A model generated the notes under the pieces. It was not told the origin of the DNA. It did no database searches and saw only the letters and a list, made by a program, of their open reading frames with translations. The translations under genes were made by a program, and so were the position numbers. Below are positions 1 through 17,275 of a stretch of DNA of 17,701 nt, one piece after another. The first letter of the stretch is position 1, and every line of letters starts with the position of its first letter. The stretch comes from Kudoa neothunni. Lineage: Eukaryota > Animalia > Cnidaria. The stretch is from assembly GCA_964304625.1 (NCBI GenBank), contig OZ199838.1, positions 14,129,160 through 14,146,860 of the forward strand, written 5' to 3'.

Positions 1-2732
1 ATTAGGAGGGCATTTTTGCAGAGATTCTTCTTCATTTTGAAAAGGATCACTGCCAGTATCATCTTCATTGGTTTTGTCAGTAGACTCAGATTTGGATATG
101 TATTTCTTATAAAATTGCAGTAATGATTCATTGTCATTGAGAGCAGGATACAATTCTTCATAAGAACGGTTGCTTGTGGAAAAACAATTGTTGCTGGGGT
201 GAGGTTGAGTAGGCTTGTGGAATTTCAGCGCAAAATCTACATATGCGTAAAGAGCCGTGTAACAGTAAAGGAACCCTTCATCTTGATAGTTCTCAATAAC
301 ACTCATAAACACTTCCACCAGTGGTTCAATTAACTCTCGGACGCATTGATCGCTGTCCTCTTCTACTAAGGCGACAAGGGATTTGAAAATAATGGGTGCA
401 TTATTGTTCCAAGAGAGGTAACGCATCTGTAGTGATATCTCATCGACAATCACTTCTTTGAAGTCCATCACTAATAGCGCCAAATTGTTATAACCAATAT
501 TGTTGGATATCGACGTCAAACAATCAAATGAAGCTTCACAAACCGAAGGAAAACCAGCGAGCGTACATCTCAACGTTAATAGAGTGTACAACACTCTAAC
601 GAAATAACAATCGATATATTTGGCGGAGAGTAGTTGACTGGATTCTCGTACAAAATTAAACACTTGAAAACACATATGAGGGATGTGATTAGTGGTGTGC
701 CAATTAAACATTAGGTCTCCATTAGTGGAATTGAGAGCGATTCCCAACTCTTGCAATACCATTTCATATTGAGGGGTGGGTTGACGGGGGCTGTACAACT
801 GATGGAACAATTCTTGTTGATCCCCAAATATGTAATCGTGTACAGTTTCGAGTAGACCATGTAAATAGTTGATATCCACATTGAGCGTAGTATTATTTGT
901 AGGAGTATCTTTTAATTTGGGGCCAGTTATATTAAACGCTTGCAAACAACGATTCACTATGTAAAGATATGGCCAATAGTCCGCTAGAGATTGATTTTCC
1001 ATAAATTCTGCGCATATCGAAGTTATATCTATAAAATAGCCCACATTCACCATCAGCTGCAACATCTAAAGAGAAACTCTCAATAAAAGTACTCAATACC
1101 ATTATAAATACATTCTCAATGATATCCATCTCAAATTTTTCCAACACACGTTTAATGTTGACTGTTTGCTTTAGTTGAATGGGGATTGGGTCTCTACGAG
1201 AGTGCACAACTTGTTCGCTGTTTAAGAGTTTAATTTGATTGGGTTTTGAATTGTCAAGCTGACCATATCCCACCAACTAAAACCAATAAATATATTCTTA
1301 AGATTAAGATTAAATTTACTTTTGCTAAAAATTCTATCAACCTTTTCAACAACTCGCGATCTACGCACAGATCGCCCTCCAACACTCTCAAACACACTGT
1401 TATCAATTTTAAGTTCTCAACAACACTGAGTTGGTGTTTTAAAATATTTTCTGATGATTTTTTGAACAATTTCGAATAATAGCTCATCATATGATGTTTA
1501 TTTTGGTCACAAATTGATGAATAGTAACTTAGACAACTTAAAACCAAGCTACAAACATCGTCAAAATCGGTTGTCAACAATTTTGTTGAAACATCAAAAA
1601 GTAAGTTATTTAAATTAAGTTGGTGGCAATTTCTAAAGTTATAATCTACGATTCCGGCCAATTGTAGGCACATCGTGTGATCGCAATCACGAAAAACCAA
1701 TGTAGTGATTTCCATAATTAATGAAGCTAATCTTTGAGTTGCCTCATTACTAGTGTTCTTAATTGACAGGTTGGAAATTTCTTCGGCTATAAAATCAAAT
1801 TTAACAATCAAATACAAATTTTAAAGCAACTAACTACATTTGGAACTAGAATCCGTGGGAATATCACCAATAGACTGCAAACAAGCCCATTGATCGTTGA
1901 GAAGCACCCCCAAGTAATAATAAAAACTGAGCAAACATTTTTGCTTCAATTTAAGCTTTGTGTAGGATTTATTTTTAAAAATATTCATCACAACACTCAA
2001 TACTCCAGGCAAAAATATCACTATTGATTTTGCTATCTTCCTAATAGTATTTATAAAGTTACTTTTCACACCAATTAATATACTTTTTAGTTGCACAACT
2101 TAAAGTAGTTTTTTTGGTTAAATATTTTGGTCCAAAATTGTAAAATTCCAAACATTGTTCAAAAACTTGAGTAGATCGGCTCGTCTCAACAATGAGTTTT
2201 GTTGTGGCACACATGTAACCATAGAAAGGGGCAGACGTGTTGTCCTCAAGCAATAGTCGGAATACAACTTCATTCTCTGCTATCAAACTATTCAATAACG
2301 CAATAATATGTTGTTTGATAGTGTCATTTTGCTTCACAGGTTTCAATTCACCATCCACATCATCCAAATCCACCAATAAATTTGTTACTATTCGTATAAC
2401 TCTCTTAAACAATTCCACGCTCTCTATTCTATTTGAACAAAAAAGATGTACTTCGAATATCCCCTAATAAAATTATATAACTTTATCAGTTCAGTTATGA
2501 TGATATTGATTTGTATAGTCTCGATAAATGAATGATGATAACTTTTTTTGTTAGCAGCATAAATAGGCAACAACGATGTGAACATTTCTACAAATAATTT
2601 GTCGTTCGTCACAGTTATATTCTTGTGTTGAAACTCTTCAAATTCTAACTTTATTTTTGATCCCAAGTTGCTGTTTGGAGTCACCATGTAAAACCCAATT
2701 AGCGTTCTTATCTTATTGAATGCTTTATCCAT
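1..2732 (-). CDS. TTI1: TELO2-interacting protein 1 (TTI1) homolog, 3'-partial. Exons 2732-2452, 2428-2063, 2040-1838 (or 1835), 1786-1320, 1276-1051, 1028-<1
   Basis: Five GT-AG introns (2429-2451, 2041-2062, 1787-1837, 1277-1319, 1029-1050) join the listed minus-strand ORFs and an unlisted open exon 1028-1 into one frame of about 857 codons. Motifs resembling TTI1 as I recall it: 'IVIFLPGVLS', and 'LYTLL...IGYNNLALLVMDFKEVIVDEISLQMRYL' (compare GYxSLxxLIxxNxDYLVxxISLxLRHL), followed by an acidic linker. Family call is by recall, not search. Confidence 0.75.
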
Positions 2733-3410
2733 TGTTGTCAACAGTTTCTACCTACACATAAGTAGGGCCGAAATTAGAATTTTTAAAATATTGTTGGTAT
2801 TTTTTAGATTAATATAAATAAATACATCAACTATTTCAATGATGGACGTTGTAACAGTCAAAATTGTAATGGAGTTAACTTTCGATACGCATGCGCCACA
2901 ACCTGTGATTCTTGAAAAATAATTTGATTATGAAATGTTTAATCATTAGATGCTAAATATGAATATAAACATAAATAAATGGGATAAAGATTAATTTTTT
3001 GGAATTTTTAAAACACACTCTTAGCATGCTATTCAATACAAAACTTTTGATCAGTGATTCTTAACCTTTCTTCTTGTGGACCCCTAATATGTTCAATGAG
3101 CATATCATGAACCCAATCTTGTTTCAACGCATAATGCATAATAAATATAAACATTTCAACCCTTACGTTCCCATTGTTCATTTTAGTAAACCGGTTAAAA
3201 AAGATATAAAATTATTGCTAAATTGTTTATTTTTAACAAAATAAAATTCAAATTGTATATAATTTTAATATTTGTTTAATTTAAAAAATTCACGATACAA
3301 AAAAATTAGGAACGGAATAGTAAACTTAGATAAATAATCTACGTTAACCCTAATTTTATTAAAATATTTATTATTTAAATTAACTCCTGAACACCTGAAG
3401 AAAAAAATTA

Positions 3411-4289
3411 CACGAATACCTGGAGGTGGCCAATGTGACCGCATGCGAAAATTAATTCAAATAATAGAAATCGTTACACCCAAGGTTAGGAACATAATCA
3501 CTTACGTTATTTTTTACATCCTAAAATAAAATAAACTTAAACAAATATATCAATGATGTATTTTTGTGACGTTTATTTGCGCAAGCGCGACGAATAGGGA
3601 TAATTTTGCCTGTTTATACTTTGAATAGCGCGAAAAATTAGAAATAAACTTTTTTATTGTTTTATTTTCCTCATTTTCTTGTTGTTATTATTAATATTAT
3701 TATTATCATTTTAACGGCAAATGTTTTCTTTTATTCTCAAAATCCATGATTTTATTAAGAAATCTCTTCCTCTGTTTACAGAAATATGTTAAATATATGT
3801 AGTCTAGGGATCTTTAGGTCTCGAATTTTTAAGTTGTGATAGGATGGTCCAAATTAAACTTTAAACAACTATATTTAACTTTGTGCTTTTTGTTGATATG
3901 TAATTTAACAATATTATTATATTCGCGATTCCCATGCTAGATTAAATTAGTTAACCGAATCAAGTTGTTATAGAAACAAAAAAATGAATTTTAAACAATT
4001 TTCTTGCTTCAAAGTACATTTATAATGTTTATTTTACTGCAGAAAAGCCTTTTTATATATTTTAAATATTTAAACGTTATTATTTATATGATGGGCATGT
4101 TCAGGTATTCGCGTCACTTTTTTTCATTTTTTGATTTTAAGCGAAAAAATTATACTTAAACTCCAGTATTGAAGGATTTTTGTAAGAACCAATATACTCT
4201 AAAATACATCTAGGGAAAAGTGGAAATAATATATTTGATAAAAGTTATTGATATAATAAGCGCTGATTAGCCACCTCCAGGTATTCGTG
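3411..4289. mobile_element. Putative non-autonomous DNA transposon (~880 bp) with 24-bp TIRs, CAC...GTG termini
   Basis: 3411-3434 CACGAATACCTGGAGGTGGCCAAT matches the reverse complement of 4266-4289 at 23/24. Flanks AATTA (3406-3410) and GATTA (4290-4294) look like a 5-bp TSD with one mismatch. No internal ORF. Confidence 0.65.
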
Positions 4290-5224
4290 GATTAATTATA
4301 TAGTGGTTTTAAAATACGCACTAAAATTTTTAATCGTTAAGACCAATTAGTTTTGGTATTAAAACAATAAGCTAACAACCATGAAATCCTTATCAGTAAT
4401 TTTTTTATAAATTATTAAAATTATAACGAAATATAGGCAATGATGCATAATATTTAAAATAAAAAGTTCAATCAAATAGGTTGAATTATTATATATACAT
4501 GCGTAAACATTTAAACGTAACATCAATAGAAAATTTCTAAATGAAAAATTCTCGTAAATTCATCAAAATATCTTTGATATACAAATTCTCTATTGCCGTA
4601 AATTATTGTATTTATTATAATAAAGAGTTTAAGCAAACGAAGGATCATTATCAATAGAATGCGAGATTAACGCAAATGAAATATTTTTTATATAAATAAT
4701 AGACATTAAGAAATATTTGAGGAGATTTTTGTAATTTCTTGTTGTCAATAAGTTCACAGAATTCTAACAAAGCATTTGAGAAAGCAACGCGCATATAAGT
4801 GATATTGTGACTTAGTTTTTATGGTCACCAGTGTGGAAATCCAGTTTCGCAATAATAGAATAGACTGTTGTAAAAGGAGTAATCATTCTAATTTCATAGT
4901 CTGCAACATTAAGAAGTATTTTTAGTTTTTATCAAATAATCTATTGAATAACTTTTGTTTTTATAGGTGTTTTTAAAAAATAAATTATAACACAAAGAAA
5001 TTTCGTAATAAATATAAAATATAAGAAACAATAACGCAAGGGTATGTTCGAAATTTTTAGTAATTACGCTAATATTAAAAAATACCAAATTATAATGAAT
5101 GTATGACGATAAAATTAGATTCAGATTTTAGTGAAACCACTCATGGGCCCCAGGTTAAGAACTGCTGCCTCTGATGAAGACGATGATGTCCGTGCGTGCG
5201 CAGCCGAACTATTTTAAGACGTAG

Positions 5225-6402
5225 ATGAAGCGACAGAAAGAATTTTTTCTGCTGTCCAACAAAAAAAGCCTTTTCGAAAATAGCGAGGACAGTAACGAAG
5301 AAAAAATTCTAGACATAAAATTGTATTATTATGAGGCAGAAAGATGTTATTAGTTTGTTATAGAGCACCGCCTTTGCTGATTAACGACGATGACTCTGAC
5401 CAAGACGAATTGGAAGAATTTCTTAGGAAAAATTCTCAAGATAAAAAAAAATTTTCTTCCGAACCTAAAGCCAATAAAATGTTTGATAAAGAACTGAATT
5501 TGATGGATATAAAATCTTCGAAAAATCATTGGCATAAAAATGATGGTGATGCCGATAGTGTGATTATTGTTGATGATAGCTTGATAAATGAGTTTTCCAT
5601 CGACGATGAGTCTTTTTTTAATCACAGTTTTGAATGTGTTGGTAACCCTCAGCTAACCGATAAAATTGTATTCATATTTTCAAAATAAGTTGGCTGTAAT
5701 TGTTGTGTAGAGAAATCGTCGTAAAGTGAAAACTGCGCCGAAGAAAAGAACCAGAGAAACACAAATTGAAAAAAATCTTAAAAAACTCGCTCAACCTCCA
5801 ACTATCAACGCTATTAAGACACAAAATTACGCACCTGAATTTAATGAAACTGTTAAAATCAATATTATGGTTATGGTTTTTTTCAAAGGCGTTACAAAAA
5901 AATATCTCCTCGATAACCAACAACCTTTGATTGAGTCTCTTACACCAAAAATCAGAGAAAACTATCCCGAAATTTCTGATACTCCATTACATTTCTTTAA
6001 GTTCTACGATGAAGATAATAAACTGCTTGATTTTTCTAAAAATCCTGAAACTCTTCAACTTAAATATGCTGATTCTATTGGTATTTTTGGAGGGATTTGT
6101 GATGTAATTTGATTGTAGATTGTATTATTGTACCCTCCGAAGGAAATGAGGAAGATTTCCGAACTGATATGATCAGTGTGAAATTCCAAGATGGTTCCAA
6201 GCATCCGCTAATCTTAAAAACTAAACCAGCAGACCCATTGGGTCCGTTATTTGAAAAATATTTATACAAAACCAACAAATCCTCTGATCTAATTAAATTC
6301 TATTTTGATGGGGATCAACTCTCCAACAATCAATCCCCCTGCGATATCGATATGGATGAAGACTTTGGTATTGATGTAGTTTTTGTAAAGACCAATATTT
6401 AG
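5225..6402 (+). CDS. NFATC2IP: NFATC2-interacting protein / Rad60-Esc2-Nip45 (RENi) family, two C-terminal SUMO-like domains, ~351 aa. Exons 5225-5322, 5364-5667, 5711-6080, 6119-6402
   Basis: Introns of 41, 43 and 38 nt join the ORFs in frame. Acidic low-complexity N-terminus. SLD1 ends 'PETLQLKYADSIDCII'; SLD2 reads 'IKFYFDGDQLSNNQSPCDIDMDEDFGIDV' and has no terminal di-glycine. Start uncertain: an upstream exon from the ATG at 5143 is possible. Confidence 0.8.
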
Positions 6403-6768
6403 AATTGTGTGCTATTGTAGAATTGTTATTTGTTGATTTTATATATACTGACTTTTCTTTTTAATAATTCTATTTGTTTGTCGAGTGCCAATTTTTCTTT
6501 TGTTGTTATGTTGTATATTAATTCAGCGATTCAATATCTGTGATGGATTGGAGTGGAGTTAATACAATTGTTTCAAGACATGTGCTTTGCTTAATTTAGT
6601 TTATAGAGTAATTCGTTAGTGAACTGATATATTTTCAAAATTGTCGAGTATAGTGTATTAATTATTAGAATGCTTTTACTAGATGAGGTATGATTTTAGT
6701 TATTTAAGAGATTGGTGTTCTTATTTGATAAAGGTTGTCATTGTTAGATTGCGTTTGAGACATATTTC

Positions 6769-9700
6769 CTTTATTTACCGTTCAACAATTTACATTTTTC
6801 TTTTAAGTATTTTTAGATTTTGTAAATTATAAAATGTTGAATTAGATATGAACATTGACTTATAAACTATTTAAGAATTTAGAGAATAAAAATATACACA
6901 TTCCTGAGTTTAAATACTAGAATTTATATGAATTAATTTAAATTTATTCTATTTATTATAATGGATATGTAGCTAAAAAAATATGTTCAACAATATCCGT
7001 TTAATATTTAATTGATAAGTATATACGATGATTATTTCGATTAGATTCATACTATTTAATTATATATGATTTTCCGTTATACTGTCGTTTTATTCATGAC
7101 GGGAATATTTATATTTAATCTTATTTTAATTTTATTAATTAATATGAGACCATTTGTACACATTTTTTTATTGGTGGCAGTTTTGATATGTACATATTAC
7201 TATTGTTTTCATTAGTTCATATCATTCATAGACGCCCATGGTTATTCCGTCAATGCAACCACGTCAACAGCTGTAATTGTTGTGAAAGCTCTCTCCTATA
7301 AAATTATAGATGAGTCTGGTAAAAAAGTAAAACTGACATTGAGTGGTACTGATTATGGTGCTAACAAGCATTGTCTCATAAAGAAGGGCAGTAGTGCTTT
7401 AACTGAATATGAGGACATTGACATAAACACAAGTCAGGTTGATAACAAAAGTGTAATTAGTTGCAACAGTGCTGATATTAAATTGACATATGAAAAACTC
7501 TCCCCAAGAAACAAGTATATATATGTTTTCAAAGCAGAATCCGATTCAGGTGCTAAAGCTGGTGTAAAGGGAGGAAATGTTTTTGGATTTGAAATACGTA
7601 TATAAATATCTAGGAATAGCATTTATTTATCTTATCGTTATTTAGCATTATTGGTAAATCCTCAGGTAGAAATATCAATAGAAACTCAAAAATTGAAATT
7701 TTCTACTAAAACTTGTAATCCAGTTACCTGCCCTGTTAAATACAAAAAGGAACAATACAACGCCGGGCAAGCTGCAGCTGACTGCGCCCAAGCTAGTGAC
7801 GTCGAAGTAGAATTTGATTTGATGATTCCATATTATGAAATGCAATGTGATAAGTATCCAAGCTTCTTTTATCATATGCCAAATGCATACATGAAAAAAG
7901 AAATTGACGTTTTTAAACCACAATATTATGTAGCCTTTAAATCAAATACTGATCAAACCAAATACAATATTCAATTTACAAACAAGTTCCCAACTGAAAT
8001 TTGCCGTTTTGGTATTAGAGATACTACTGCTACAGGAACTTCATTTTCACATGTTTGTGGACCTGAAGGAAAAGAATGTTACGCACCCTGTGATAATGTT
8101 CAGCTAACTCTTACCCCATCAAAAGTTCTTGTTGATATTTCAATCCAAACCAGACACCATAATATAAAATTAATGGATAATAATTATGATGGATATAAAT
8201 CGACTAAATTTGGTATGTTATAACAAATTTTATTATTTTTAAACTATATATATATAGCCATTGTTGAGCCAGAAGGTGGTTTGTTGAAAAATATAATAAG
8301 TACCGGAGTTACGCTAAATGCATCTCCTTTTAAACTGAGTAGTACACCTTCATTTACTACCTGCACCATAAAACACTTCGAAGCTGATAAACCAAGACCG
8401 AATGCTAGAGGAGGTACAACAACAAAATGCAATGCTTCCGCTTGTGCAATAACATGTGATGCTAGTCTAACAATTAAAGAGTTACCCGAAGGAAAACCAA
8501 TGATGATTGAAATAGAATCTGGAATTAATAACCCAGAAAACTTTAATGAATACTTATTTGTAAGAACAAGTAAATTTGATTTCAAAAATAAAACGTATAT
8601 TAATTTGTTAATGTAGAAAACAACGAAAATAAAGTATTTAACACTGCCAATCCAACAGCAACTCAATCAACAATTGTAATTAAAGCATTAGAAGGTGATG
8701 AAGATAACACCACAAACCAACCCACTTGTTCCTATTACATAAGCATAACAGGAAAAAATGAATTCGTTGATGCACATTGTGCCGATAGCTACCCTTGCAG
8801 AGGCCATTGCAAGGAGTCAAAAACTATCATTAACCTTACCCTAGGATCAACTTATGACATCAAAGTTATTGCACACAAGGAATTTGCACCGAAAACATAC
8901 ACCGGAATTAAAAGTAATATTTTTATTCTTATAAATGAATATTATTGATTATGATAAGATTTGTTAACACTTTCCCTCACATCAAATTTCTTGGATAAAG
9001 GATTCAAAGTTGTTGGAACCTTATCTATTCCTGATCCGGATGCGAAATGCGAATTTAAACTCCAGAGAAAAGATCAAACATTTAAGGATGTTTTAGTTTG
9101 TCCTCCAACTATTTCAACTCCAAAAACAAGCGTTACATCTAGAATAGTAGAGGGCAAGCTAAATAATGCTGTTGAAGATTCAACTAATTCTGTTAAAAAA
9201 TTAACTTTACCATCTGCATCCGATGAAATGAAAGTTGCGAGAGCAGGAAACCCCTCCTCCGATCCAACCACACCTACAACACCATCAACAAACATTGCTG
9301 TACAATTTCCACCATGCATCCAGGCACCATTATGCAATCATATTGTTGTGAGTGAAGGGTATGAAGCAGATAAAGAATATAAATTGTTAGTTACAGCTAT
9401 TGGAAGGTCAGAAGAGGTATCTATAACTATATCGAAAAGTAATATTATTTTCAATTTTATTCTTTACCAATTATGAAATATATTGATATATTTAATTCAC
9501 ATATTGTTATAAATTATATTTTAAATCATTCGCATTATAAACTTTTTCATTTAGATCCATCACTCGTATCCAATGAGGACGTGAATAAACAAATAGATAT
9601 AGTGATCGTACGCGACGATAAAACACTACAAGTTAAGACCATTCTACCTCCGGGTTCGGATGAAAATTCTTCGTGCAAATGGGAATTAATGGAATGGGAT

Positions 9701-10398
9701 AATGTTGCTAAACCAGTTGTGAAAAAATGCATGGTTGTTAGTCAAGATTGTGCCGCTTTTCCATCTTGTAAGGATATCTCAATTTCGGATGTTGAAGATA
9801 GCAATGATTACCGTGTAAGGGTAATTCATAGCATTGATGGGACAATTTTTGGAACTGCTATAATAAAAAGAGGTATTTATTAAATTATTATATTTTCATA
9901 ATTTTTATAATTAATAAATAGGCGAAACATCGAACAAATCAACGTAATTTCACGTATATGTTACAATTTTTAGATATTTTTTAGGTCAAAGAATACAATG
10001 TAGTTCACGTTTAATTTATCTTACTAATTTTTCCACTCAGGATAGTTGCAATTGTGGTTCCGGTTGTAATAATGATAATTGGAATAGGATTCTATTTCGG
10101 ATACATGAAAAATAAAAATTAATTATTCATGATTCAATTATATACAATGGTTGAATTTTAATTTTTTACTGAGATTTGGTTATTTTTAATATTTTATTGG
10201 TATGTTTACATTAATTATTATTTTTTCTATTATATCTAATAACACGCATTCAAAATTCTTATTCTTTGAATGAGATATATTATTTCGTATCAATGAAACA
10301 TTTATTAGGATCAAAATTTATATAACAAAGAATAATATAAATATTATTGAAATTAATGTCAACAAAGTAGTTATTGCAATAATCTGTTTTTTATCTAA
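6769..10398 (+). repeat. Segmental duplication, copy A: promoter, membrane protein gene and 3' exon of the syntaxin gene
   Basis: Aligns co-linearly with 13925-17701, offset 7156 at the start (CTTTATTTACCG at 6769 and 13925). Similarity continues to the window end. Confidence 0.95.
7144..10122 (+). CDS. Uncharacterised type I membrane protein, copy A (~834 aa): signal peptide, ~7 Cys-containing FN3-like modules, TM helix, very short tail. Exons 7144-7189, 7232-7597, 7646-8212, 8258-8569, 8617-8913, 8959-9438, 9555-9872, 9922-9943, 9985-9999, 10041-10122
   Basis: Nine GT-AG introns give an uninterrupted 2505-nt frame. N-terminus MRPFVHIFLLVAVLIYAHG is signal-peptide-like. C-terminus IVAIVVPVVIMIIGIGFYFGYMKNKN* is a TM helix plus tail. 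FN3-like motifs such as 'IINLTLGSTYDIKVIA'. Exon structure is conserved in copy B. Confidence 0.85.
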
Positions 10399-11253
10399 CA
10401 CAAAATTGTTAAGATTTAAACAATTAAAATGTTACTTTTTATTTTGTTCTGTACGTCAGTTAATTTCCCAATTAAATTTTTTGTAATCATTTCTTGTTTC
10501 ATGCATTCTTCCTCAATATTGGTAATTAACCTAATCAAATATTAATTTCAACAGTTTAAATTTAAATTAACTCGTTTTGTTCGCTAAGTTCATTGTTCAT
10601 CTCTATGCCAATATATTTTAGTCTGCTAACGCCCTTGTTTATTTGCGAAAGGTAGTTATTATCAATATTTTCTAGATTCTATATTTTTATTAGTTGTGAC
10701 ATGTTGAGAAATATTTGTATGAATTTACAACGTAGGTAGTTATATTCTCCTATATATAATGTTCCAGAAATGTTTCAGAAATATTTATTAATTACTTTTG
10801 TATTATTTGTTCCAATAGAATTTAATTGTAGTGTAATTTGTTGAAGAATTTCCTTTCTGTGCATTATTTCATCTTTGTCAATATCAGGGAATTTATCTAC
10901 ATGCGAAATGTATGTCACAACATCATCTACAGCGTAAGATTTATAACTTTGGTTATTTATCACTATATTTACAGTGTTCTGTAAAGATTGGATTTCTTTC
11001 TTCAAATCAGCCAAACAACTATTTGAATTCTGATCATTTAAATTTGATCGGGTATCCAAAAATAAATTTATTCTATCCTTGACATCGCTATTTTTAAAAC
11101 TTAGTCATAAATTCATTGATTTCTGCCAAATTATTTTTGTTTGGTGAATTTTAACAAAAAGGCCTACCTGTATACATCGTAGAATGGATCTTTCACGTTT
11201 ATGTTTACACCACGAGAAGGAACGATCCCACTAATTGCAAAACTCTGTGTCAT
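10318..11253 (-). CDS. STX6: Syntaxin-6/10 (Tlg1)-like Qc-SNARE, ~225 aa. Exons 11253-11168, 11087-10796, 10749-10729, 10678-10572, 10530-10436, 10394-10318
   Basis: Spliced frame is intact (678 nt). N-terminal 'KDPFYDVYSDVKDRIN' resembles the Syntaxin-6_N DPF motif. SNARE helix 'LSQINKGVSRLKYIGIEMNNELSEQNELITNI' has the central Q. C-terminal tail-anchor TM 'IIAITTLLTLISIIFILFFVI*'. A small extra 5' exon near 11337-11345 is possible. Confidence 0.8.
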
Positions 11254-11492
11254 TATTCGTTTAATCTATAATAAATAACACTTTTGTTTGTTTTAGCGTC
11301 GTTTAATATTATTAAAAATTTCAATACTAACATTACTATTCTCATACGTTTCCTTCAAATTTTCCAGATGTTATAACATATTCAAATTCCCAAACAATAA
11401 CTAATTATAAATTTGTATAAAGAATTTCTTGAAATAAATTTAAATTCTGTATTCAATGTATACTCTTAGTCTAGTGTATGATCCCACTAAAA

Positions 11493-11563
11493 CAGCGTTT
11501 CCCTTTTATTTTTTCCCCGCACCCCCAATGATTTCTTCATGCACCCCCTATAGGGAAACCCTG
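11493..11563. mobile_element. 71-bp hAT MITE (Buster/Charlie-like)
   Basis: TIRs CAGCGTTTCCCT and AGGGAAACCCTG match at 11/12. Perfect 8-bp TSD CACTAAAA at 11485-11492 and 11564-11571 fits the Buster nnnTAnnn target consensus. Internal GCACCCCC motif occurs twice. Confidence 0.85.
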
Positions 11564-12348
11564 CACTAAAATAAGGGATTATGCATCTTCGCCCCCCTAA
11601 TGACCGATATTACATTACCGCGTGCAATCACGACTACTACAACAGGTACTACGACCACTACTAACGATAGTTCCCAAATACAGTTACCATAGTAGTTATT
11701 TCTCAATTACGATCTGTGTCCTCTTCTGCGCACAATCATAACATCTAGTAATATCTACCGAATTATAAATAAAACGTCCGATGTATATAGACTTTGGATT
11801 ATAATTAATTCAATATGAAATAATATCGATTACTAAATTATTAATTTAATAATTTATATTATAATGAATGTGGTAAATAAAATTATATGTTTTACCGGAG
11901 TGTAAGATATTTCAATTAAGGTCTTACAGGTCATATTTATATAATTTTAGAAAATTCTAGTAATATTGACTTTAGATAATAACAAAACGTAAAGTAAACA
12001 GTTTTAAAAAAACTATGCAGTTAAAAATTTATTTCAAATTACACAGTTTTAAAAAAAACTTGGAGATGAGACAGAAAAATTTATTAAGGTTTATTATTCC
12101 TAAAAATAAAAAAGAATTATGATGAAAAAATAGTTTAGCAAGAAAAAGAATCAACAAAACCTTAATTTTTAAGAAAAGTAAGTAAAGAAATATTTGCGAA
12201 CGTTAGAATCGTGTATATTTAATACGAGGATTGTAATTTTAAATGAATGGAAAAAGTGCTTTTCTATAATCCAATCGGCATGTTAAACGAGTATTTTGAT
12301 TATGTGAGAACATGAATCTTTTGCATTAATTATCCGCTAGAGTTTATA

Positions 12349-13534
12349 CCGGGTTTTACATCCAAAACCGGACGCTATATATACTTAAGCAAAAATTTAT
12401 TTTATGTTGCATTTAAAAAAAAAAACAACTCAAATATAATTTATAGAAATTAATGAAGATTATAATAGTTTTTAACTTCTAGGAATGTCATCTAAGGTGT
12501 GACACAATCCAAGAAAACTTTCTCTATGTTGAAAGTAATTCTTTAAATTTTCCTCAGTGACAGATTGAGAGGAAGTTGTCATTCTCTGTATTAAATCACG
12601 ATGTCCACAGGTAGGGCCATCTTTTCTAGTTTTCGATTTAATTTGAAAAAATACCTCCTCACAAGGGTTCGAAAATGGCGAGTATCGAGGTAGATATTTT
12701 ATCTCATAAGAATAGTTGTCAAAAAATTCCATATTAGAACGATGGAATCTGACGTTATCCATGATAATAATGTAGTCTCCATCGCCCAACACATTTTTTA
12801 ATTGGTTTAAAAATTGTTGAAAAATTTCACAATTTACATCCCTGTTAATGGATTCACAGTAAACTACGCTGATAGCACTGACAGCCAGGATCATGGTTAC
12901 GTTCGGTCCTCTACTGCTAATCACCGCTGGATTGGGAGTTATTCCAACAGGAGCGCGTCCATGAGAGCGTAGTAAATGGAGGGAAAAGGGGCTTTCATCG
13001 ACGAATATCACCTTTTCATACCGGACATTTATTGGTAAGTTTTTGTACCTATTGGCGCATTCTCTCCGTTCTTGCTTTACATCGGGTGAATTGCGACTTT
13101 GAGATATCTGTTTTATCATTTTAAATTATATGTTCATTTTTTGAGGCATCTCCAAACGGTTGTTTCGCTCATCCAAATTGAGTTTTTGGATCGCAGACTG
13201 TAAAGTTATGGTACAGTTGTCCTCAATAAGCTGGAGAAGTTGGCGCTGGACGTCCTCAGTAATCTTAATATCCCTTGGGTCGCCTCTTACATCTTTTGTA
13301 TAGGTTGCGAATGTTTTATACCTTTAACCATGCCATGCAGGGTAGATTTTGGTATTCCTAGATCGTAAGCTACCACGGAGAAAGATTTTCCTTAATCAAT
13401 CACGAGCTTAATGGCGCGTTTTCTTAAGTCATCTGAAATATTATTTCTTAATATTTTGTTGAATTTAAATTTGTTTGTTCCCTCGCTTTCCTACGCTTAA
13501 AAGTGCGCCGTTCGGTTATGGATGTAAAATCCGG
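12349..13534 (-). mobile_element. IS630-Tc1-mariner superfamily DNA transposon, 1186 bp, degenerate
   Basis: 26-bp TIRs at 12349-12374 and 13509-13534 (23/26 identical), flanked by TA on both sides (12347-12348 and 13535-13536). Encloses a DDE transposase. Confidence 0.92.
12472..13448 (-). pseudogene. Disrupted DDE_3-type transposase
   Basis: Catalytic domain motifs 'IFVDES', 'IIMDNVRFH' and 'LPRYSPFSNPCE'. The upstream HTH region 'SFSVVAYDLGIPKSTLHGMVK' carries in-frame TAA codons at 13394-13392 and 13128-13126, and 'SETTVWRCLK' lies in a shifted frame. Confidence 0.88.
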
Positions 13535-14299
13535 TATTAAGATATATCGATTTTGTAAATTATAAATATTTGTAATAATATATCTGTATTTAATATTTAA
13601 CCTAAAATTTTGATGCTAATTATCAAAGAGAAAATTTTTGTCTCGATGAAATAAATGTGATATAAATACTTATCGTAGACAGCTTTTTTGACCTTCAATA
13701 AGTGTAATTATTATTAGATGTGGATTACTTTAATTTTAAACTGAATGCTAAACTTTTTATCTCATTTTCTTAATAAAAAAATTGAATTCAACCAATATAT
13801 ATATATATAATAGTTTTTACTTTTTCACTAAAATAGAATAATAAGCTTTAAATTAAATTAAAAAAATATTATGAGTTAAAAAATAAATATCTTAGTTATA
13901 ACATAACTTTTTAAAACGTATTGTCTTTATTTACCGATCGCCAATTTACATTTTTCTTCTAAGTATTTTTAGATTTTGTAAATTATAAAATATTGAATCA
14001 GATATGAACGCTGACTTATAATCTAATTAAGAAATTAGAATAAAAATATACACATTCCTGAGTTTAAATACTAGAATTTACATGAATATATTTAAATTTA
14101 TTCTATTTACTTATAATAGATATGTATCTAGAAAAATTTGTTTAATCATATTCGTTTAACATTTAATTGATAAGTATATACGATGATTATCTCGATTTGA
14201 TTCAAACTATTTAATTATATATGATTTTCCGTTATATTGTCGCTTTATTCATGACGGGAATATTTATGATCTAATCTGATTTTAATTTTATTAATTAAT

Positions 14300-17275
14300 A
14301 TGAGACAATTTTTACACATTTCTTTATTGGTAGCAGTTTTGCTCTGTACATATAACCACTATTGTCATTAGCTGATATCTTTCATAGACGCCCATGGTTA
14401 TTCTGTTAATGCAAACACACAAACAGCTGAAACTGTTGCGAAAGCTCTCTCCTATAAAATTATAGATGAGTCTGGTAAAAAAGTAAAACTAACATTGAGC
14501 GGTACTGATTATGGTGCTAACAAGCATTGTCTCATAAAGAAGGGCGATGGTGCTTTAACTGGATATGAGGACATTGACATAAACACAAGTCGGAGTGATA
14601 ACAAAAGTGTAACTACTTGCAACAGTGCTGAGATTAAATTGACATATGACAAACTTTCCCCAAGAAACAAGTATATATATGTTTTCGTAGCAGATTCCGC
14701 GCAAAATGCTGCAACTAAAGTAAAGGGAGGGAATGTTTTTGGATTTGAAATACGTATATAAACATCTAGGAATAGCATTTATTTATTTTATCGTTATTTA
14801 GCATTATTAGTAAATCCTCAGGTAGAAATATCAATAGAAACTCAAAAATTGAAAATTTCTACTAAAACTTGTAATCCAGTTACCTGCCCTGTTAAATACA
14901 AAAAGGTTCAATACAGCTCTGAAGCGGCGGCAATTGATTGCGTCAGTGCTAAGGATGCTAAAGTTGAATTTGATTTGATGATTCCATTTTATGAAATGCA
15001 GTGTGATAAATATCCAAGCTTCTATTATCACATGCCAAATGCATACATGAAAAAAGAAATTGACGTTTTTAAACCACAATATTATGTAGCCTTTAAATCA
15101 AATACTGATCAAACCAAATACAATATTCAATTTACAAACAAGTTCCCAACTGAAATTTGCCGTTTTGGTATTAGAGATACTACTGCTACAGGAACTTCAT
15201 TTTCACATGTTTGTGGACCTGAAGGAAAAGAATGTTACGCACCCTGTGATAATGTTCAGCTAACTCTTACCCCATCAAAAGTTCTTGTTGATATTTCGAT
15301 CCAAACTAGATATCATGATATAAAAGCAGTGGATACCAAGTACGAGGGATATAAAGCGACTAAATTTGGTATGTTTTAGCAAATGTTTATGTTCTAAAAC
15401 TATATATAGCCATTGTTGAGCCAGAAGGTGGTTTGCTGAAAGATATAATAAGTACCGGAGTTACGCTAAATGCATCTCCTTTTAAACCGAGTAGTACACC
15501 TTCATTTACCAGTTGCACCATAAAACACTTCGAAGCTGACAAACCAAGACCGAATGCTAGAGAAGGTACGCCAACGAAATGCGATGCTAGCAATAGTTGT
15601 GGAGATCAGTGTGGTAGTAACCTAACAATTAAAGAGTTACCCGAAGGAAAACCTATGATGATTATGATTACATCAGGTAGTACAGACAATCCAGCTAATT
15701 ATAATGAATACTTATTCTTAAGAACGAGTAAATTTGATTTAAACAATAAAACATATATTAATTTCTGAATGTAGGTCCCAAAGCAGACACAGAATTCAGC
15801 TCTACCGATCGAATAGTAACTGAGTCAACAACTGTAATTAAGGCACTACAAGGTGAAGAAGATGCAACAGCAACCCAACCCACTTGTTCCTATTACATAA
15901 GCATAATAGGAAAAAATGAATTCGTCGATGCACACTGTGCTGATAGTTACCCTTGCAGAGGCCACTGCAAGGAGTCAAAAACGATTATTAACCTCATTCC
16001 AGGATCAACTTATGACATCAAAGTTATTGCACACAAAGAGTACGCACCGAAAACTTACGCTGGAATTAAAACAAGTATTTTTGTTCTTTCGGAGGATATT
16101 ATTGACTTTATAAGATTTGGCAACACTTACCCTTACATCAAGTTTCTTGGATAAAGGATTCAAAGTGGTAGGAACTCTATCTACTCCCGATCCAGATGCG
16201 AAATGCGAATTTAAACTCCAGAGAAAAGATCAAACATTTAAGGATGTTTTAGTTTGTCCTACTCCTACTTCAACTCCAAAAACAAGCGTTACATCGAGAA
16301 TAGTAGAGGGCAAACTAAATAATGCTGTTGAAGATTCAACTAGTTCCGTTCAGAAATTAACTTTACCATCTGCATCCGATGAAATGAAAGTTGCGAGAGC
16401 AGGAAACCCCTCCTCCGATCCAACCACACCTACGACACCATCAACAAACATTACTGTACAATTTCCACCATGCATCCAGGCACCATTATGCAATAATATT
16501 GTTGTGAGTGAAGGGTATGAAGCAGATAAAGAATATAAATTGTTAGTTACAGCTATTGGAAGGTCAGAAGAAGTATTTATATCTGTACCAAAAAGTAATA
16601 CTACTTTCGATTTTATTTTTTACCAATTATTGAATATATTAATATATTTAATTCACATGTTATAAATTATATTTTAAATCATTCGCATTATAAACTTTTT
16701 CATTTAGATCCATCACTCGTATCTAATGAAGACGTGAACAAAAATATTGATATAGTGATCGTACGTGAAGATAAAACCCTACAAGTTAAAACCATTCTAC
16801 CTCCGGGTTCGGATGAAAATTCTTTATGCAAATGGGAATTAATGGAATGGGATAATGTTGCCAAACCAGTTGTGAAAAAATGCATGGTTGTTGGTCAAGA
16901 TTGTGCCGCTTTCCCATCTTGTAAAGATATCTTAATTTCGGATGTTGAAGATAGCAATGATTACCGTGTAAGGGTAATTCATAACATCGATGGGACAATT
17001 TTTGGAACTGCTATAATAAAAAGAGGTATTTATTAAATTATTATATTTTCCTAATTTTTATAATTAATAAATAGGCGAAACATCGAATAAATCAACGTAA
17101 TTTCACGTATATGTTACAATTTTTAGATATTTTTTAGGTCAAAGAATACAATGTAGTTCACGTTTAATTTATTTTACTAATTTTTCCATTCAGGATAGTT
17201 GCAATTGTGGTTCCGGTTGTAATAGTGATAATCGGAATAGGATTCTATTTTGGATACATGAAAAATAAAAATTAA
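14300..17275 (+). CDS. Uncharacterised type I membrane protein, copy B (~837 aa). Exons 14300-14345, 14388-14753, 14802-15368, 15410-15727, 15775-16074, 16115-16594, 16708-17025, 17075-17096, 17138-17152, 17194-17275
   Basis: Same 10-exon structure as copy A, with an intact 2514-nt frame. Signal MRQFLHISLLVAVLLYAHG; TM and tail IVAIVVPVVIVIIGIGFYFGYMKNKN*. All coding length differences from copy A are multiples of 3. Confidence 0.85.

What the first reader, a model, noticed from the sequence alone, without database searches (positions are those of the whole stretch)
7144..17275. Candidate undescribed variable surface-protein family: two intact paralogous type I membrane proteins with hypervariable patches
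Seen in sequence: both copies keep the signal peptide, the module cysteines, splicing and the TM helix. Differences cluster in short, replacement-rich patches: FKAESDSGAKAG vs FVADSAQNAATK; EQYNAGQAAADCAQASDVE vs VQYSSEAAAIDCVSAKDAK; HHNIKLMDNNYDG vs YHDIKAVDTKYEG; CNASA-CAITCDAS vs CDASNSCGDQCGSN; KNNENKVFNTANPTATQ vs SPKADTEFSSTDRIVTE. Membrane-proximal exons 6-10 are much more conserved. Some coding patches look more diverged than several of the introns. Inference: diversifying selection on exposed loops, as in parasite variant antigens, adhesins or self/non-self recognition proteins. Hydractinia Alr proteins are an analogy only. The very short tail suggests a coat or adhesion role more than signalling.
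Basis: partly seen in the sequence, partly recalled or inferred. Interest (0 to 1): 0.82.

Follow-up and report, generated by a model that had tools for sequence, protein, structure and literature searches.

The report
Two Kudoa FN3-like surface-protein paralogs
Two neighbouring, intact genes for a membrane-anchored protein made of Ig/FN3-like modules belong to an undescribed family of several hundred genes in the tuna parasite Kudoa neothunni. Their "hypervariable patches" are loosely constrained loops left unlike while gene conversion evens out the rest, and positive selection is not shown.

Summary
Copy A (7144-10122) and copy B (14300-17275) are intact 10-exon genes of 834 and 837 aa. Each has a signal peptide, 26 aligned cysteines, GT-AG phase-1 introns, one TM helix and a tail of about 6 residues. 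Replacements are clustered (p<0.0002), and exons 6-10 are the most conserved.

It is 0.87 in an unbiased patch set and 0.61-0.84 in the same columns of independent paralog pairs. That is near neutral, not above 1.
- Silent differences cluster with the replacements: dS is 0.53-0.58 in patches and 0.17-0.18 outside.
- In the patches A and B are as far apart as either is from other subfamily genes.
- A 266-bp tract is identical (P about 6e-10).

This fits gene conversion homogenising the framework while loops stay diverged. A site model puts only 0.8% of codons at omega above 1.

The genes are not a two-member family. Each of three modules has at least 150 intact copies (278-482 candidates) in this 40.26-Mb genome, the published K. 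neothunni assembly. No Pfam, PDB-sequence or literature match was found, and only 18 unnamed fragments among 1.84 billion proteins. The folds are Ig/FN3-like.

No RNA data could be tested. Copy B ends at a 200-N scaffold gap. This scan had already found the same family on other DNA of this genome.

The parts
7144..7189 (+). Copy A exon 1: start codon and signal-peptide-like hydrophobic segment
   Evidence: Read directly. The hydropathy peak covers residues 3-7 onwards. The GT donor is at 7190.
7232..7597 (+). Copy A exon 2: N-terminal, membrane-distal Ig-like beta-sandwich domain. It is the most diverged module and holds patch P1 at 7528-7563.
   Evidence: dN/dS against B is 1.12. The AF2 model has pLDDT 80 and is all-beta. 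Fold matches to V-set/Ig/FN3 are weak. The genome holds at least 150 intact copies. A and B lack 2 of the 4 family cysteines.
7646..8212 (+). Copy A exon 3: tandem pair of FN3/Ig-like domains, with patches P2 (7750-7806) and P3 (8155-8193)
   Evidence: AF2 pLDDT is 68. Foldseek matches cytokine-receptor FN3 tandems at E about 2e-4. VIA Z is 6-7.7. There are 150 full-length intact hits at E<1e-50 and 482 candidates.
7876..8141 (+). 266-bp tract identical between A and B (B: 15032-15297): a recent gene-conversion tract
   Evidence: It is the longest identical run. P is about 6e-10, and the longest run in 2000 permutations was 158. About 11 silent differences were expected and none seen.
8258..8569 (+). 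Copy A exon 4: beta-sandwich module with patch P4 (8428-8466) and a second patch near its end
8617..8913 (+). Copy A exon 5: module with patch P5 at its start (8619-8666)
   Evidence: At this patch B is nearer the subfamily consensus than A.
8959..9438 (+). Copy A exon 6: module plus a Ser/Thr/Pro-rich, mucin-like linker
   Evidence: dN is 0.045.
9555..9872 (+). Copy A exon 7: membrane-proximal module, the most conserved
   Evidence: dN/dS is 0.14. The genome holds at least 150 intact copies and 301 candidates.
9922..10122 (+). Copy A exons 8-10 (9922-9943, 9985-9999, 10041-10122): short stalk, TM helix and a tail of about 6 residues. The splicing of exons 8 and 9 is ambiguous.
   Evidence: Alternative GT-AG paths are listed. 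The hydropathy peak covers residues 794-804 onwards.
14300..17275 (+). Copy B, same 10-exon structure: 14300-14345, 14388-14753, 14802-15368, 15410-15727, 15775-16074, 16115-16594, 16708-17025, 17075-17096, 17138-17152, 17194-17275
   Evidence: Coordinates were mapped from A, with GT-AG at all introns. The exon 5 donor was corrected to 16075. The reading frame is open.
7074..7127 (+). Conserved upstream elements: CCGTTATACTGTCG-like at 7074-7087 and TTAATCTTATTT-like at 7116-7127, 20-70 nt before the ATG
   Evidence: Both are conserved in all 8 subfamily genes, in upstream DNA that is otherwise poorly alignable. The exact first motif is limited to the subfamily. Distant members carry a looser TTTCG...GATTATCT pattern.
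12472..13119 (-). Tc1/mariner-like DDE_3 transposase ORF in the spacer between the copies. It is not part of the gene pair.
   Evidence: Pfam PF13358 matches at E 1.9e-19. The genome holds 39 related copies, the closest 92% identical.

Best explanation
A and B are tandem paralogs of a very large gene family found here in Kudoa neothunni, with a few unnamed relatives in other public samples. The family has at least 150 and probably about 300 genes. Each encodes a type I membrane glycoprotein: a signal peptide, about seven disulfide-stapled Ig/FN3-like beta-sandwich modules encoded by phase-1 exons, a Ser/Thr/Pro-rich stalk, one TM helix and a tail of about 6 residues.

Shown:
- Both genes are intact, and their frameworks are under purifying selection (omega 0.17-0.24).
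- The patches are the loops that vary across the whole family, and they evolve nearly neutrally (omega 0.6-1.0).
- A and B exchange sequence by gene conversion.

Inferred:
- The patchy pattern arises because conversion keeps homogenising the conserved framework. The fast-evolving loops either escape conversion or stay unlike, so in the patches the two genes look as old as the whole subfamily.
- The protein sits on the parasite's surface as a coat or adhesion molecule rather than a signalling receptor. The membrane-distal modules carry the variable binding or exposed face.
For: Gene models and topology.

Family size: each give 150 scored intact hits, with 278-482 candidates. The six closest paralogs share the same exon plan.

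Fold.

Orphan status:
- No Pfam match.
- No PDB sequence match.
- One word-search hit.
- 18 short unnamed hits among 1.84 billion representatives.
- No paper found. The assembly paper never uses the words 'surface', 'fibronectin' or 'gene family'.

Genome identity: 40,260,978 bp minus the three chromosome lengths leaves 18,219 bp. That equals the mitochondrial contig length reported for the K. neothunni assembly.

Selection:
- Whole-gene omega is 0.38.
- Omega is 1.03 in the patches and 0.24 in the rest.
- In independent pairs it is 0.61-0.84 against 0.24-0.41.
- M1a puts 70% of codons at omega 0.11 and 30% at omega 1.

Conversion and mosaic:
- The 266-bp identical tract.
- Patch dS of 0.58 against 0.17 in the rest. 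In the patches A-B (dS 0.58) is about as far apart as A-L036 (0.66) and B-L036 (0.57).
- In the patch tree A and B have terminal branches of 0.33 and 0.27 and A+B support is 50%. In the rest-of-gene tree the branches are 0.029 each and support is 100%.
- The independent tandem pair L031/L032 is identical in exon 7 but 0.41 apart in exon 4.
- Silent differences peak within 2 codons of a replacement (pS 0.26, falling to 0.11-0.14 further away and 0 beyond 20 codons).
- Introns 1, 3 and 5 are 19-26% diverged, the others 0-11%.
Against: - No expression, splicing or protein data exist. The two runs that hold the locus are unspliced DNA contigs, and the two RNA runs tried held no reads of it.
- Surface location and function are inferred from topology alone.
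- No donor for any patch was found elsewhere in the genome. 'Old divergence that escaped homogenisation' therefore cannot be told apart from 'very fast local change after duplication'.
- Selection against homogenisation of the loops would leave the same pattern.
- Exon 2 as a whole has omega 1.12, and patch P1 has 14.2 replacement against 0.8 silent changes.
- M2a beats M1a (LRT 15.6).
- A/B replacements alone are not significantly enriched off strands (p=0.33).
Confidence: 0.6

Rival explanations
1. One reading: diversifying (positive) selection acts on exposed loops of a variant surface antigen or recognition protein. The patches differ because new amino acids there are favoured.
For: - Patch omega is about 1, four times the background.
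- Exon 2 has omega 1.12, and patch P1 has 14.2 replacement against 0.8 silent changes.
- M2a over M1a gives LRT 15.6, with 0.8% of codons at omega about 13. Candidate sites lie at 7546, 8035, 8179 and 9671.
- The same loops vary across the whole family.
- The family is huge and arrayed.
Against: - Pooled patch omega is not above 1 even with ascertainment in its favour (p=0.51), and it is below 1 in independent lineages.
- Patch dS is raised about 3-fold, and neighbouring introns are diverged too.
- Site-model tests give false positives under gene conversion, which is demonstrably active here.
Confidence: 0.22
2. Assembly artefact: A and B are two haplotypes, or a mis-joined contig end, of one locus in a diploid parasite and not two genes.
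For: - Copy B runs to the last base before a 200-N scaffold gap at window position 17702.
- The assembly came from low-coverage HiFi reads of a diploid stage and needed haplotig purging.
- A-like and B-like contigs both occur in the DNA runs at similar word depth, 5.9 and 3.6. That does not separate alleles from paralogs.
Against: - Both copies lie in one gap-free contig; the window holds no N.
- They are separated by 3.5 kb of unrelated spacer holding a transposon, and their upstream contexts differ.
- They differ by about 10% overall and 21-34% in the patches, with codon indels.
- Other tandem pairs of the family show the same layout.
Confidence: 0.05
3. Plain relaxed constraint: after duplication one copy is decaying, and the patches are the first signs of pseudogenisation.
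For: Patch omega is about 1. A and B have lost two of the four family cysteines in the N-terminal domain. At several patches A departs from the subfamily consensus.
Against: Both reading frames, all splice sites and all 26 cysteines are intact. Omega outside the patches is 0.17-0.24. The terminal branches of A and B are equal outside the patches, 0.029 each. The cysteine loss is shared by both copies, so it predates their divergence.
Confidence: 0.08

Closest known systems
Fibronectin type III / cytokine-receptor-type tandem beta-sandwich ectodomains (IL-7R alpha, common gamma chain, gp130, tissue factor)
   Same: The exon 3 model is two beta-sandwich domains in tandem. Its best Foldseek matches are these receptors, at E 2e-4 to 5e-3. 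Both are single-pass type I proteins whose modules are encoded by phase-1 exons.
   Different: No sequence similarity: no Pfam fn3 hit and no PDB sequence hit. TM-scores are only about 0.3 and Z is 6-7.7, the level of a generic fold. Each module carries extra disulfides. There is no signalling tail.
Parasite multigene surface families diversified by gene conversion (Giardia VSPs, Plasmodium var/rifin/stevor, trypanosome VSGs). VSP- and RIFIN/STEVOR-like genes were recently reported in the myxozoan Sphaerospora molnari (bioRxiv 10.64898/2026.02.11.705288).
   Same: Both are large, lineage-restricted, arrayed families of signal-peptide plus TM proteins with very short tails. The outer parts vary and the membrane-proximal parts are conserved. 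Paralogs exchange segments.
   Different: The fold and sequence are unrelated, and there are no CXXC-rich VSP repeats. Mutually exclusive expression, switching and surface exposure are untested. Omega above 1 is not shown here. The S. molnari paper does not describe this family.
Hydractinia allorecognition (Alr) family
   Same: Both are cnidarian-lineage clustered families of type I proteins whose Ig-like domains are invisible to sequence profiles, with variable membrane-distal domains.
   Different: The tail here is about 6 residues, and no ITAM/ITIM-type motif is possible. No relatives beyond 18 fragments were found in 1.84 billion proteins, so there is no detectable homology. Myxozoan biology gives no known role for allorecognition.

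Membership tests
Kudoa neothunni FN3/Ig-like type I surface-protein family (unnamed; found repeatedly by this scan) | Shared modules and exon plan: signal exon, N-terminal module, double-module exon, further single-module exons, TM exon, all introns in phase 1 | tested here: met
   Exons 2, 3 and 7 each hit at least 150 intact genomic copies. The six closest paralogs have the same exons 2-7 with conserved splice sites.
Pfam fn3 (PF00041) / sequence-defined FN3 domains | Significant match to the family profile | tested here: not met
   No Pfam family matched any of the five module exons at E up to 1. A profile of 28 paralogs found nothing in PDB sequences at E up to 1.
FN3/Ig-like beta-sandwich fold | Seven-to-nine-strand two-sheet sandwich recovered by structure comparison | tested here: met
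   Exon 3 matched FN3 tandems at Foldseek E 2e-4 and Ig/FN3 at Z up to 7.7. Exon 2 gave only weak V-set/Ig/FN3 matches, at E 0.04-0.2 and TM 0.45-0.56. The models are of medium confidence (pLDDT 68 and 80), so the fold class is supported but the exact subtype is not.
Variant surface antigen system (antigenic variation) | Large family of surface-exposed proteins | tested here: inconclusive
   The large family is shown. Exposure is inferred only from the signal peptide and TM.
Variant surface antigen system (antigenic variation) | Mutually exclusive or switching expression | not testable with these tools
   No RNA run held the locus. The assembly paper reports too few parasite RNA reads for annotation.
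Variant surface antigen system (antigenic variation) | Positive selection (omega>1) on exposed regions | tested here: not met
   Patch omega is 0.87-1.03 for A/B and 0.61-0.84 in independent pairs. Only 0.8% of codons fall in an omega>1 class, under a test sensitive to recombination.
Hydractinia Alr family | Cytoplasmic tail with signalling motifs and detectable homology among cnidarian Alr genes | tested here: not met
   The tail is about 6 residues. No homologs appeared outside a few unnamed fragments. No Alr sequence was compared directly.

The most novel reading that the evidence does not exclude
The family of about 300 genes is a true variant-surface repertoire of a metazoan parasite. One or a few members would be expressed at a time from the conserved family promoter. 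Gene conversion would shuffle loop cassettes between copies, and selection would keep the loops of neighbouring genes unlike. That would be the first antigenic-variation-type system built from Ig/FN3 modules in an animal parasite.
Probability: 0.12. Interest if true: 0.85.

Novelty: new variant of a known kind. Interest (0 to 1): 0.55.

Why it matters
Myxozoans cause major losses in fisheries and aquaculture; K. neothunni causes post-mortem muscle softening in tuna. Almost nothing is known about their host-facing surface.

A family of several hundred intact type I membrane proteins in a 40-Mb genome is likely to be a main component of that surface. For scale, the published annotation lists only 5,316 genes.

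The family was probably hidden because the genome was repeat-masked before annotation. That link is my inference.

For this pair, the value lies in a clean worked example. 'Hypervariable patches' between tandem paralogs need not mean positive selection. Here they are near-neutral loops set against a framework homogenised by gene conversion.

Tried and rejected
- Pfam on every module exon: no match.
- Word-based protein search with exon 3: one 163-aa fragment.
- ESM Atlas by features: only sub-threshold bacterial rows, scores up to 0.90 with low recognition.
- Profile against PDB sequences: nothing.
- RNA evidence: the only holders are unspliced DNA contigs, and two metatranscriptome runs gave zero reads, which is no test.
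- Search for conversion donors of patch P2 in the whole genome: A's version matches only itself. B's matches itself and one paralog at 74%.
- Short-query BLAST of nine patches against 65 family loci: no donor better than 83-94% over 21-63 nt. 'Recent import from an extant paralog' is therefore rejected.
- A/B replacements against predicted strands: not significant (p=0.33).
- The idea that the exact upstream motif GTTATATTG marks the whole family: rejected. It is found only in the 8-gene subfamily.
- First iqtree run failed on the thread count and was rerun.
- The spliced, joined protein was never sent to any search or folding tool. All searches and folds were exon by exon, by reference. Exons were concatenated only inside scripts, to count stops and length and to build the patch and rest-of-gene trees. 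The site models were fitted exon by exon.


Full report
WHAT IS THERE

The window is AT-rich (GC 23-39%). It holds a direct duplication with a period of about 7155 bp. Copy A runs from about 6750 to 10400. Copy B runs from about 13910 to the window's end. Identity is 83-96% in 300-nt blocks.

Reading the sequence and mapping A onto B gives two open 10-exon genes. All introns are GT-AG, 40-116 nt long and in phase 1.
- A: 7144-7189, 7232-7597, 7646-8212, 8258-8569, 8617-8913, 8959-9438, 9555-9872, 9922-9943, 9985-9999, 10041-10122. It encodes 834 aa.
- B: 14300-14345, 14388-14753, 14802-15368, 15410-15727, 15775-16074, 16115-16594, 16708-17025, 17075-17096, 17138-17152, 17194-17275. It encodes 837 aa.
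- The path through the two tiny exons 8 and 9 is one of several frame-keeping GT-AG options. It needs RNA to settle.

Only two hydrophobic stretches exist, at the N-terminus and just before the C-terminus. There are 26 cysteines, all aligned between the copies, and 9 N-glycosylation sequons. The tail after the TM helix is about 6 residues.

WHICH GENOME

The window is G000:C1:14129160-14146860 in a genome of 40,260,978 bp in four pieces. Three pieces are 17,154,348, 12,040,071 and 11,048,340 bp. That leaves exactly 18,219 bp for the fourth.

The G3 paper PMC12239612 describes a 40.2-Mb chromosome-scale Kudoa neothunni assembly recovered from yellowfin tuna data. It reports a median intron of 49 bp and an 18,219-bp mitochondrial contig. 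I take the genome to be that assembly. The lead came from earlier notes of this scan. The check by sizes is mine.

NOT TWO GENES BUT HUNDREDS

- The 188-aa exon 3 product finds 150 scored hits, all full length, without stops and at E<1e-50. There were 482 first-look candidates.
- The membrane-proximal exon 7 finds 150 of 301 candidates.
- The N-terminal exon 2 finds 150 of 278 candidates.
- Hits of the three exons lie 1.5-2 kb apart in the same order, so most are genes of the same plan.
- A and B belong to a subfamily of eight (72-75% aa identity in exon 3). The other six share exons 2-7 with conserved splice sites.

ORPHAN IN SEQUENCE, ORDINARY IN FOLD

- No Pfam family matches any module exon.
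- A 28-sequence profile finds no PDB sequence.
- The word search finds one fragment.
- A full HMMER scan of 1.84 billion representatives finds 18 proteins. All are short, unnamed singletons from ENA or Logan assemblies.
- One of these sits on a contig of 19-20% GC that shares almost no DNA with this genome. The family therefore exists in at least one other AT-rich eukaryote, probably another myxozoan.
- AlphaFold models built on paralog alignments are all-beta. Exon 3 (pLDDT 68) is two sandwiches whose best Foldseek matches are cytokine-receptor FN3 tandems (E 2e-4). VIA Z reaches 7.7 to Ig/FN3 domains. Exon 2 (pLDDT 80) gives only weak V-set/Ig/FN3 matches.
- I found no paper describing the family. 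The assembly paper does not mention it, and it masked repeats before annotation. That may be why the family was missed, which is my inference.

ARE THE PATCHES UNDER DIVERSIFYING SELECTION?

Whole-gene dN/dS is 0.38 (dN 0.078, dS 0.208). Exon 2 is at 1.12, exons 3-6 at 0.31-0.37 and exon 7 at 0.14. Replacements are clustered (dispersion 2.36; 0 of 5000 permutations). Silent differences are clustered as well (1.85; 0 of 5000), and the two track each other along the gene (Spearman 0.46, p=0.003).

| Codon set | dN | dS | omega |
|---|---|---|---|
| Rest of the gene | 0.045 | 0.18 | 0.24 |
| Algorithmic patch set (127 codons), A/B | 0.50 | 0.58 | 0.87 |
| Same columns, three independent paralog pairs | - | - | 0.61-0.84 |
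| Non-patch columns, same three pairs | - | - | 0.24-0.41 |

The independent pairs are free of the ascertainment bias. The patch columns are therefore recurrently fast, near-neutral loops, not sites with omega above 1.

Codon site models were fitted on per-exon trees. M0 gives omega 0.27. M1a puts 70% of codons at 0.11 and 30% at 1. M2a adds 0.8% at omega about 13 (LRT 15.6). Five codons reach posterior above 0.8: 7441, 7546, 8035, 8179 and 9671. This test uses fixed relative branch lengths and is known to give false positives under recombination.

Across the family, neutral-class codons are enriched outside predicted strands (p=1e-5). The A/B replacements alone are not (p=0.33).

WHY THE PATTERN IS PATCHY

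- A 266-bp tract (7876-8141) is identical in both copies, although about 26 differences, 11 of them silent, were expected. P is about 6e-10, and the longest run in permutations was 158. This is a recent A-B gene conversion.
- Outside the patches A and B are close (dS 0.17). Inside them they are as far apart (dS 0.58) as either is from the other subfamily genes (0.57-0.77).
- The patch tree gives A and B terminal branches of 0.33 and 0.27, with only 50% support for A+B. The rest-of-gene tree gives 0.029 each and 100% support.
- In older pairs patch and non-patch dS are equal, so the patches are not mutational hot spots.
- Another tandem pair (L031/L032) is identical in exon 7 yet 0.41 apart in exon 4.
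- Introns 1, 3 and 5, which lie beside patches, are 19-26% diverged. Introns 2 and 6-9 are 0-6% diverged.
- At codons whose amino acid is unchanged, silent differences are most frequent within two codons of a replacement (pS 0.26) and fall to 0.11-0.14 further away.
- No patch has a donor elsewhere in the genome.

Together this says that conversion between the neighbours homogenises the conserved framework while the loops stay diverged. Two reasons are possible. Mismatched DNA may block conversion, or homogenised loops may be selected against. The data do not separate these.

CAUTIONS

- Copy B ends at the last base before a 200-N scaffold gap. The 3' limit of the duplication is therefore unknown, and more copies may be hidden there.
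- I judge a haplotype artefact unlikely. Both copies lie in one gap-free contig. A 3.5-kb unrelated spacer with a Tc1-like transposon separates them. They are about 10% diverged and differ by codon indels. No spanning long read was checked.
- The only runs holding the locus are unspliced DNA contigs of one sample, possibly the assembly's own. The RNA runs tried had no reads of it. Expression is untested.

VERDICT

- The 'diversifying selection' inference is not supported as stated.
- Earlier follow-ups in this scan reached the same family, and the same conversion reading, on other DNA of this genome.

METHOD NOTE

The joined spliced protein was never sent to a search or folding tool; all such calls were exon by exon, by reference. 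Exons were concatenated only inside scripts, to count stops and length and to build the patch and rest-of-gene trees. The site models were fitted exon by exon.

Noticed in passing
window 17701 / G000:C1:14146861-14147060 (L070:862-1061): A 200-N scaffold gap starts at the base after the window's end. Copy B therefore sits at a contig end, its 3' flank is cut, and more family copies may be missing from the assembly.
   Followed up: partly
window 12472-13119 (-): A Tc1/mariner-like DDE_3 transposase ORF (215 aa, apparently N-terminally short) lies in the spacer between the copies. The genome holds 39 related copies, the closest 92% identical.
   Followed up: partly
window 7074-7087 and 7116-7127 (B: about 14230-14243 and 14272-14283): Two short upstream elements 20-70 nt before the ATG are conserved in all eight subfamily genes, while the rest of the upstream DNA hardly aligns. 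Distant family members show a looser TTTCG...GATTATCT pattern before their ATG. This is a candidate shared core promoter.
   Followed up: partly
window 7441-7452 (exon 2), B equivalent about 14597-14608: A and B lack two of the four cysteines that are nearly invariant in the N-terminal module of the family: the TCP motif is deleted and KC has become KS. One disulfide was apparently lost before A and B diverged.
   Followed up: partly
window 5344-6402 (+): The upstream neighbour gene has an acidic N-terminal part and a C-terminal Rad60-SLD / SUMO-like domain (PF11976, E 3e-10). It lies outside the duplicated unit.
   Followed up: no
window 711-2741 (-): A run of long minus-strand ORFs (for example 1254-1817, 2059-2418, 2424-2741) looks like a multi-exon gene of unknown kind. 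The only Pfam match is a weak APP_E2 hit at E 0.001.
   Followed up: no
L035 (G000:C2:1108700-1112700), exon 2 at about 342-735: In this subfamily member the N-terminal module matches in two different frames (356-538 and 573-734). That suggests a frameshift or an extra intron, so the gene may be broken.
   Followed up: no
L037 (Logan SRR31175926 contig, 7256 nt), gene at 4001-4609: A relative of the exon 3 module (E 9e-28 to the family profile) lies on a 19-20% GC contig beside SNF5-like and ribosomal S14-type genes. The contig shares almost no DNA with this genome. The family therefore occurs in another, unidentified AT-rich eukaryote.
   Followed up: partly
L031/L032 (G000:C1:12309900-12319000): A second tandem pair of the subfamily (period about 5.07 kb) is identical in exon 7 and nearly so in exon 6, but 0.41 substitutions per site apart in exon 4. 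This is a steep 5'-to-3' conversion gradient.
   Followed up: partly
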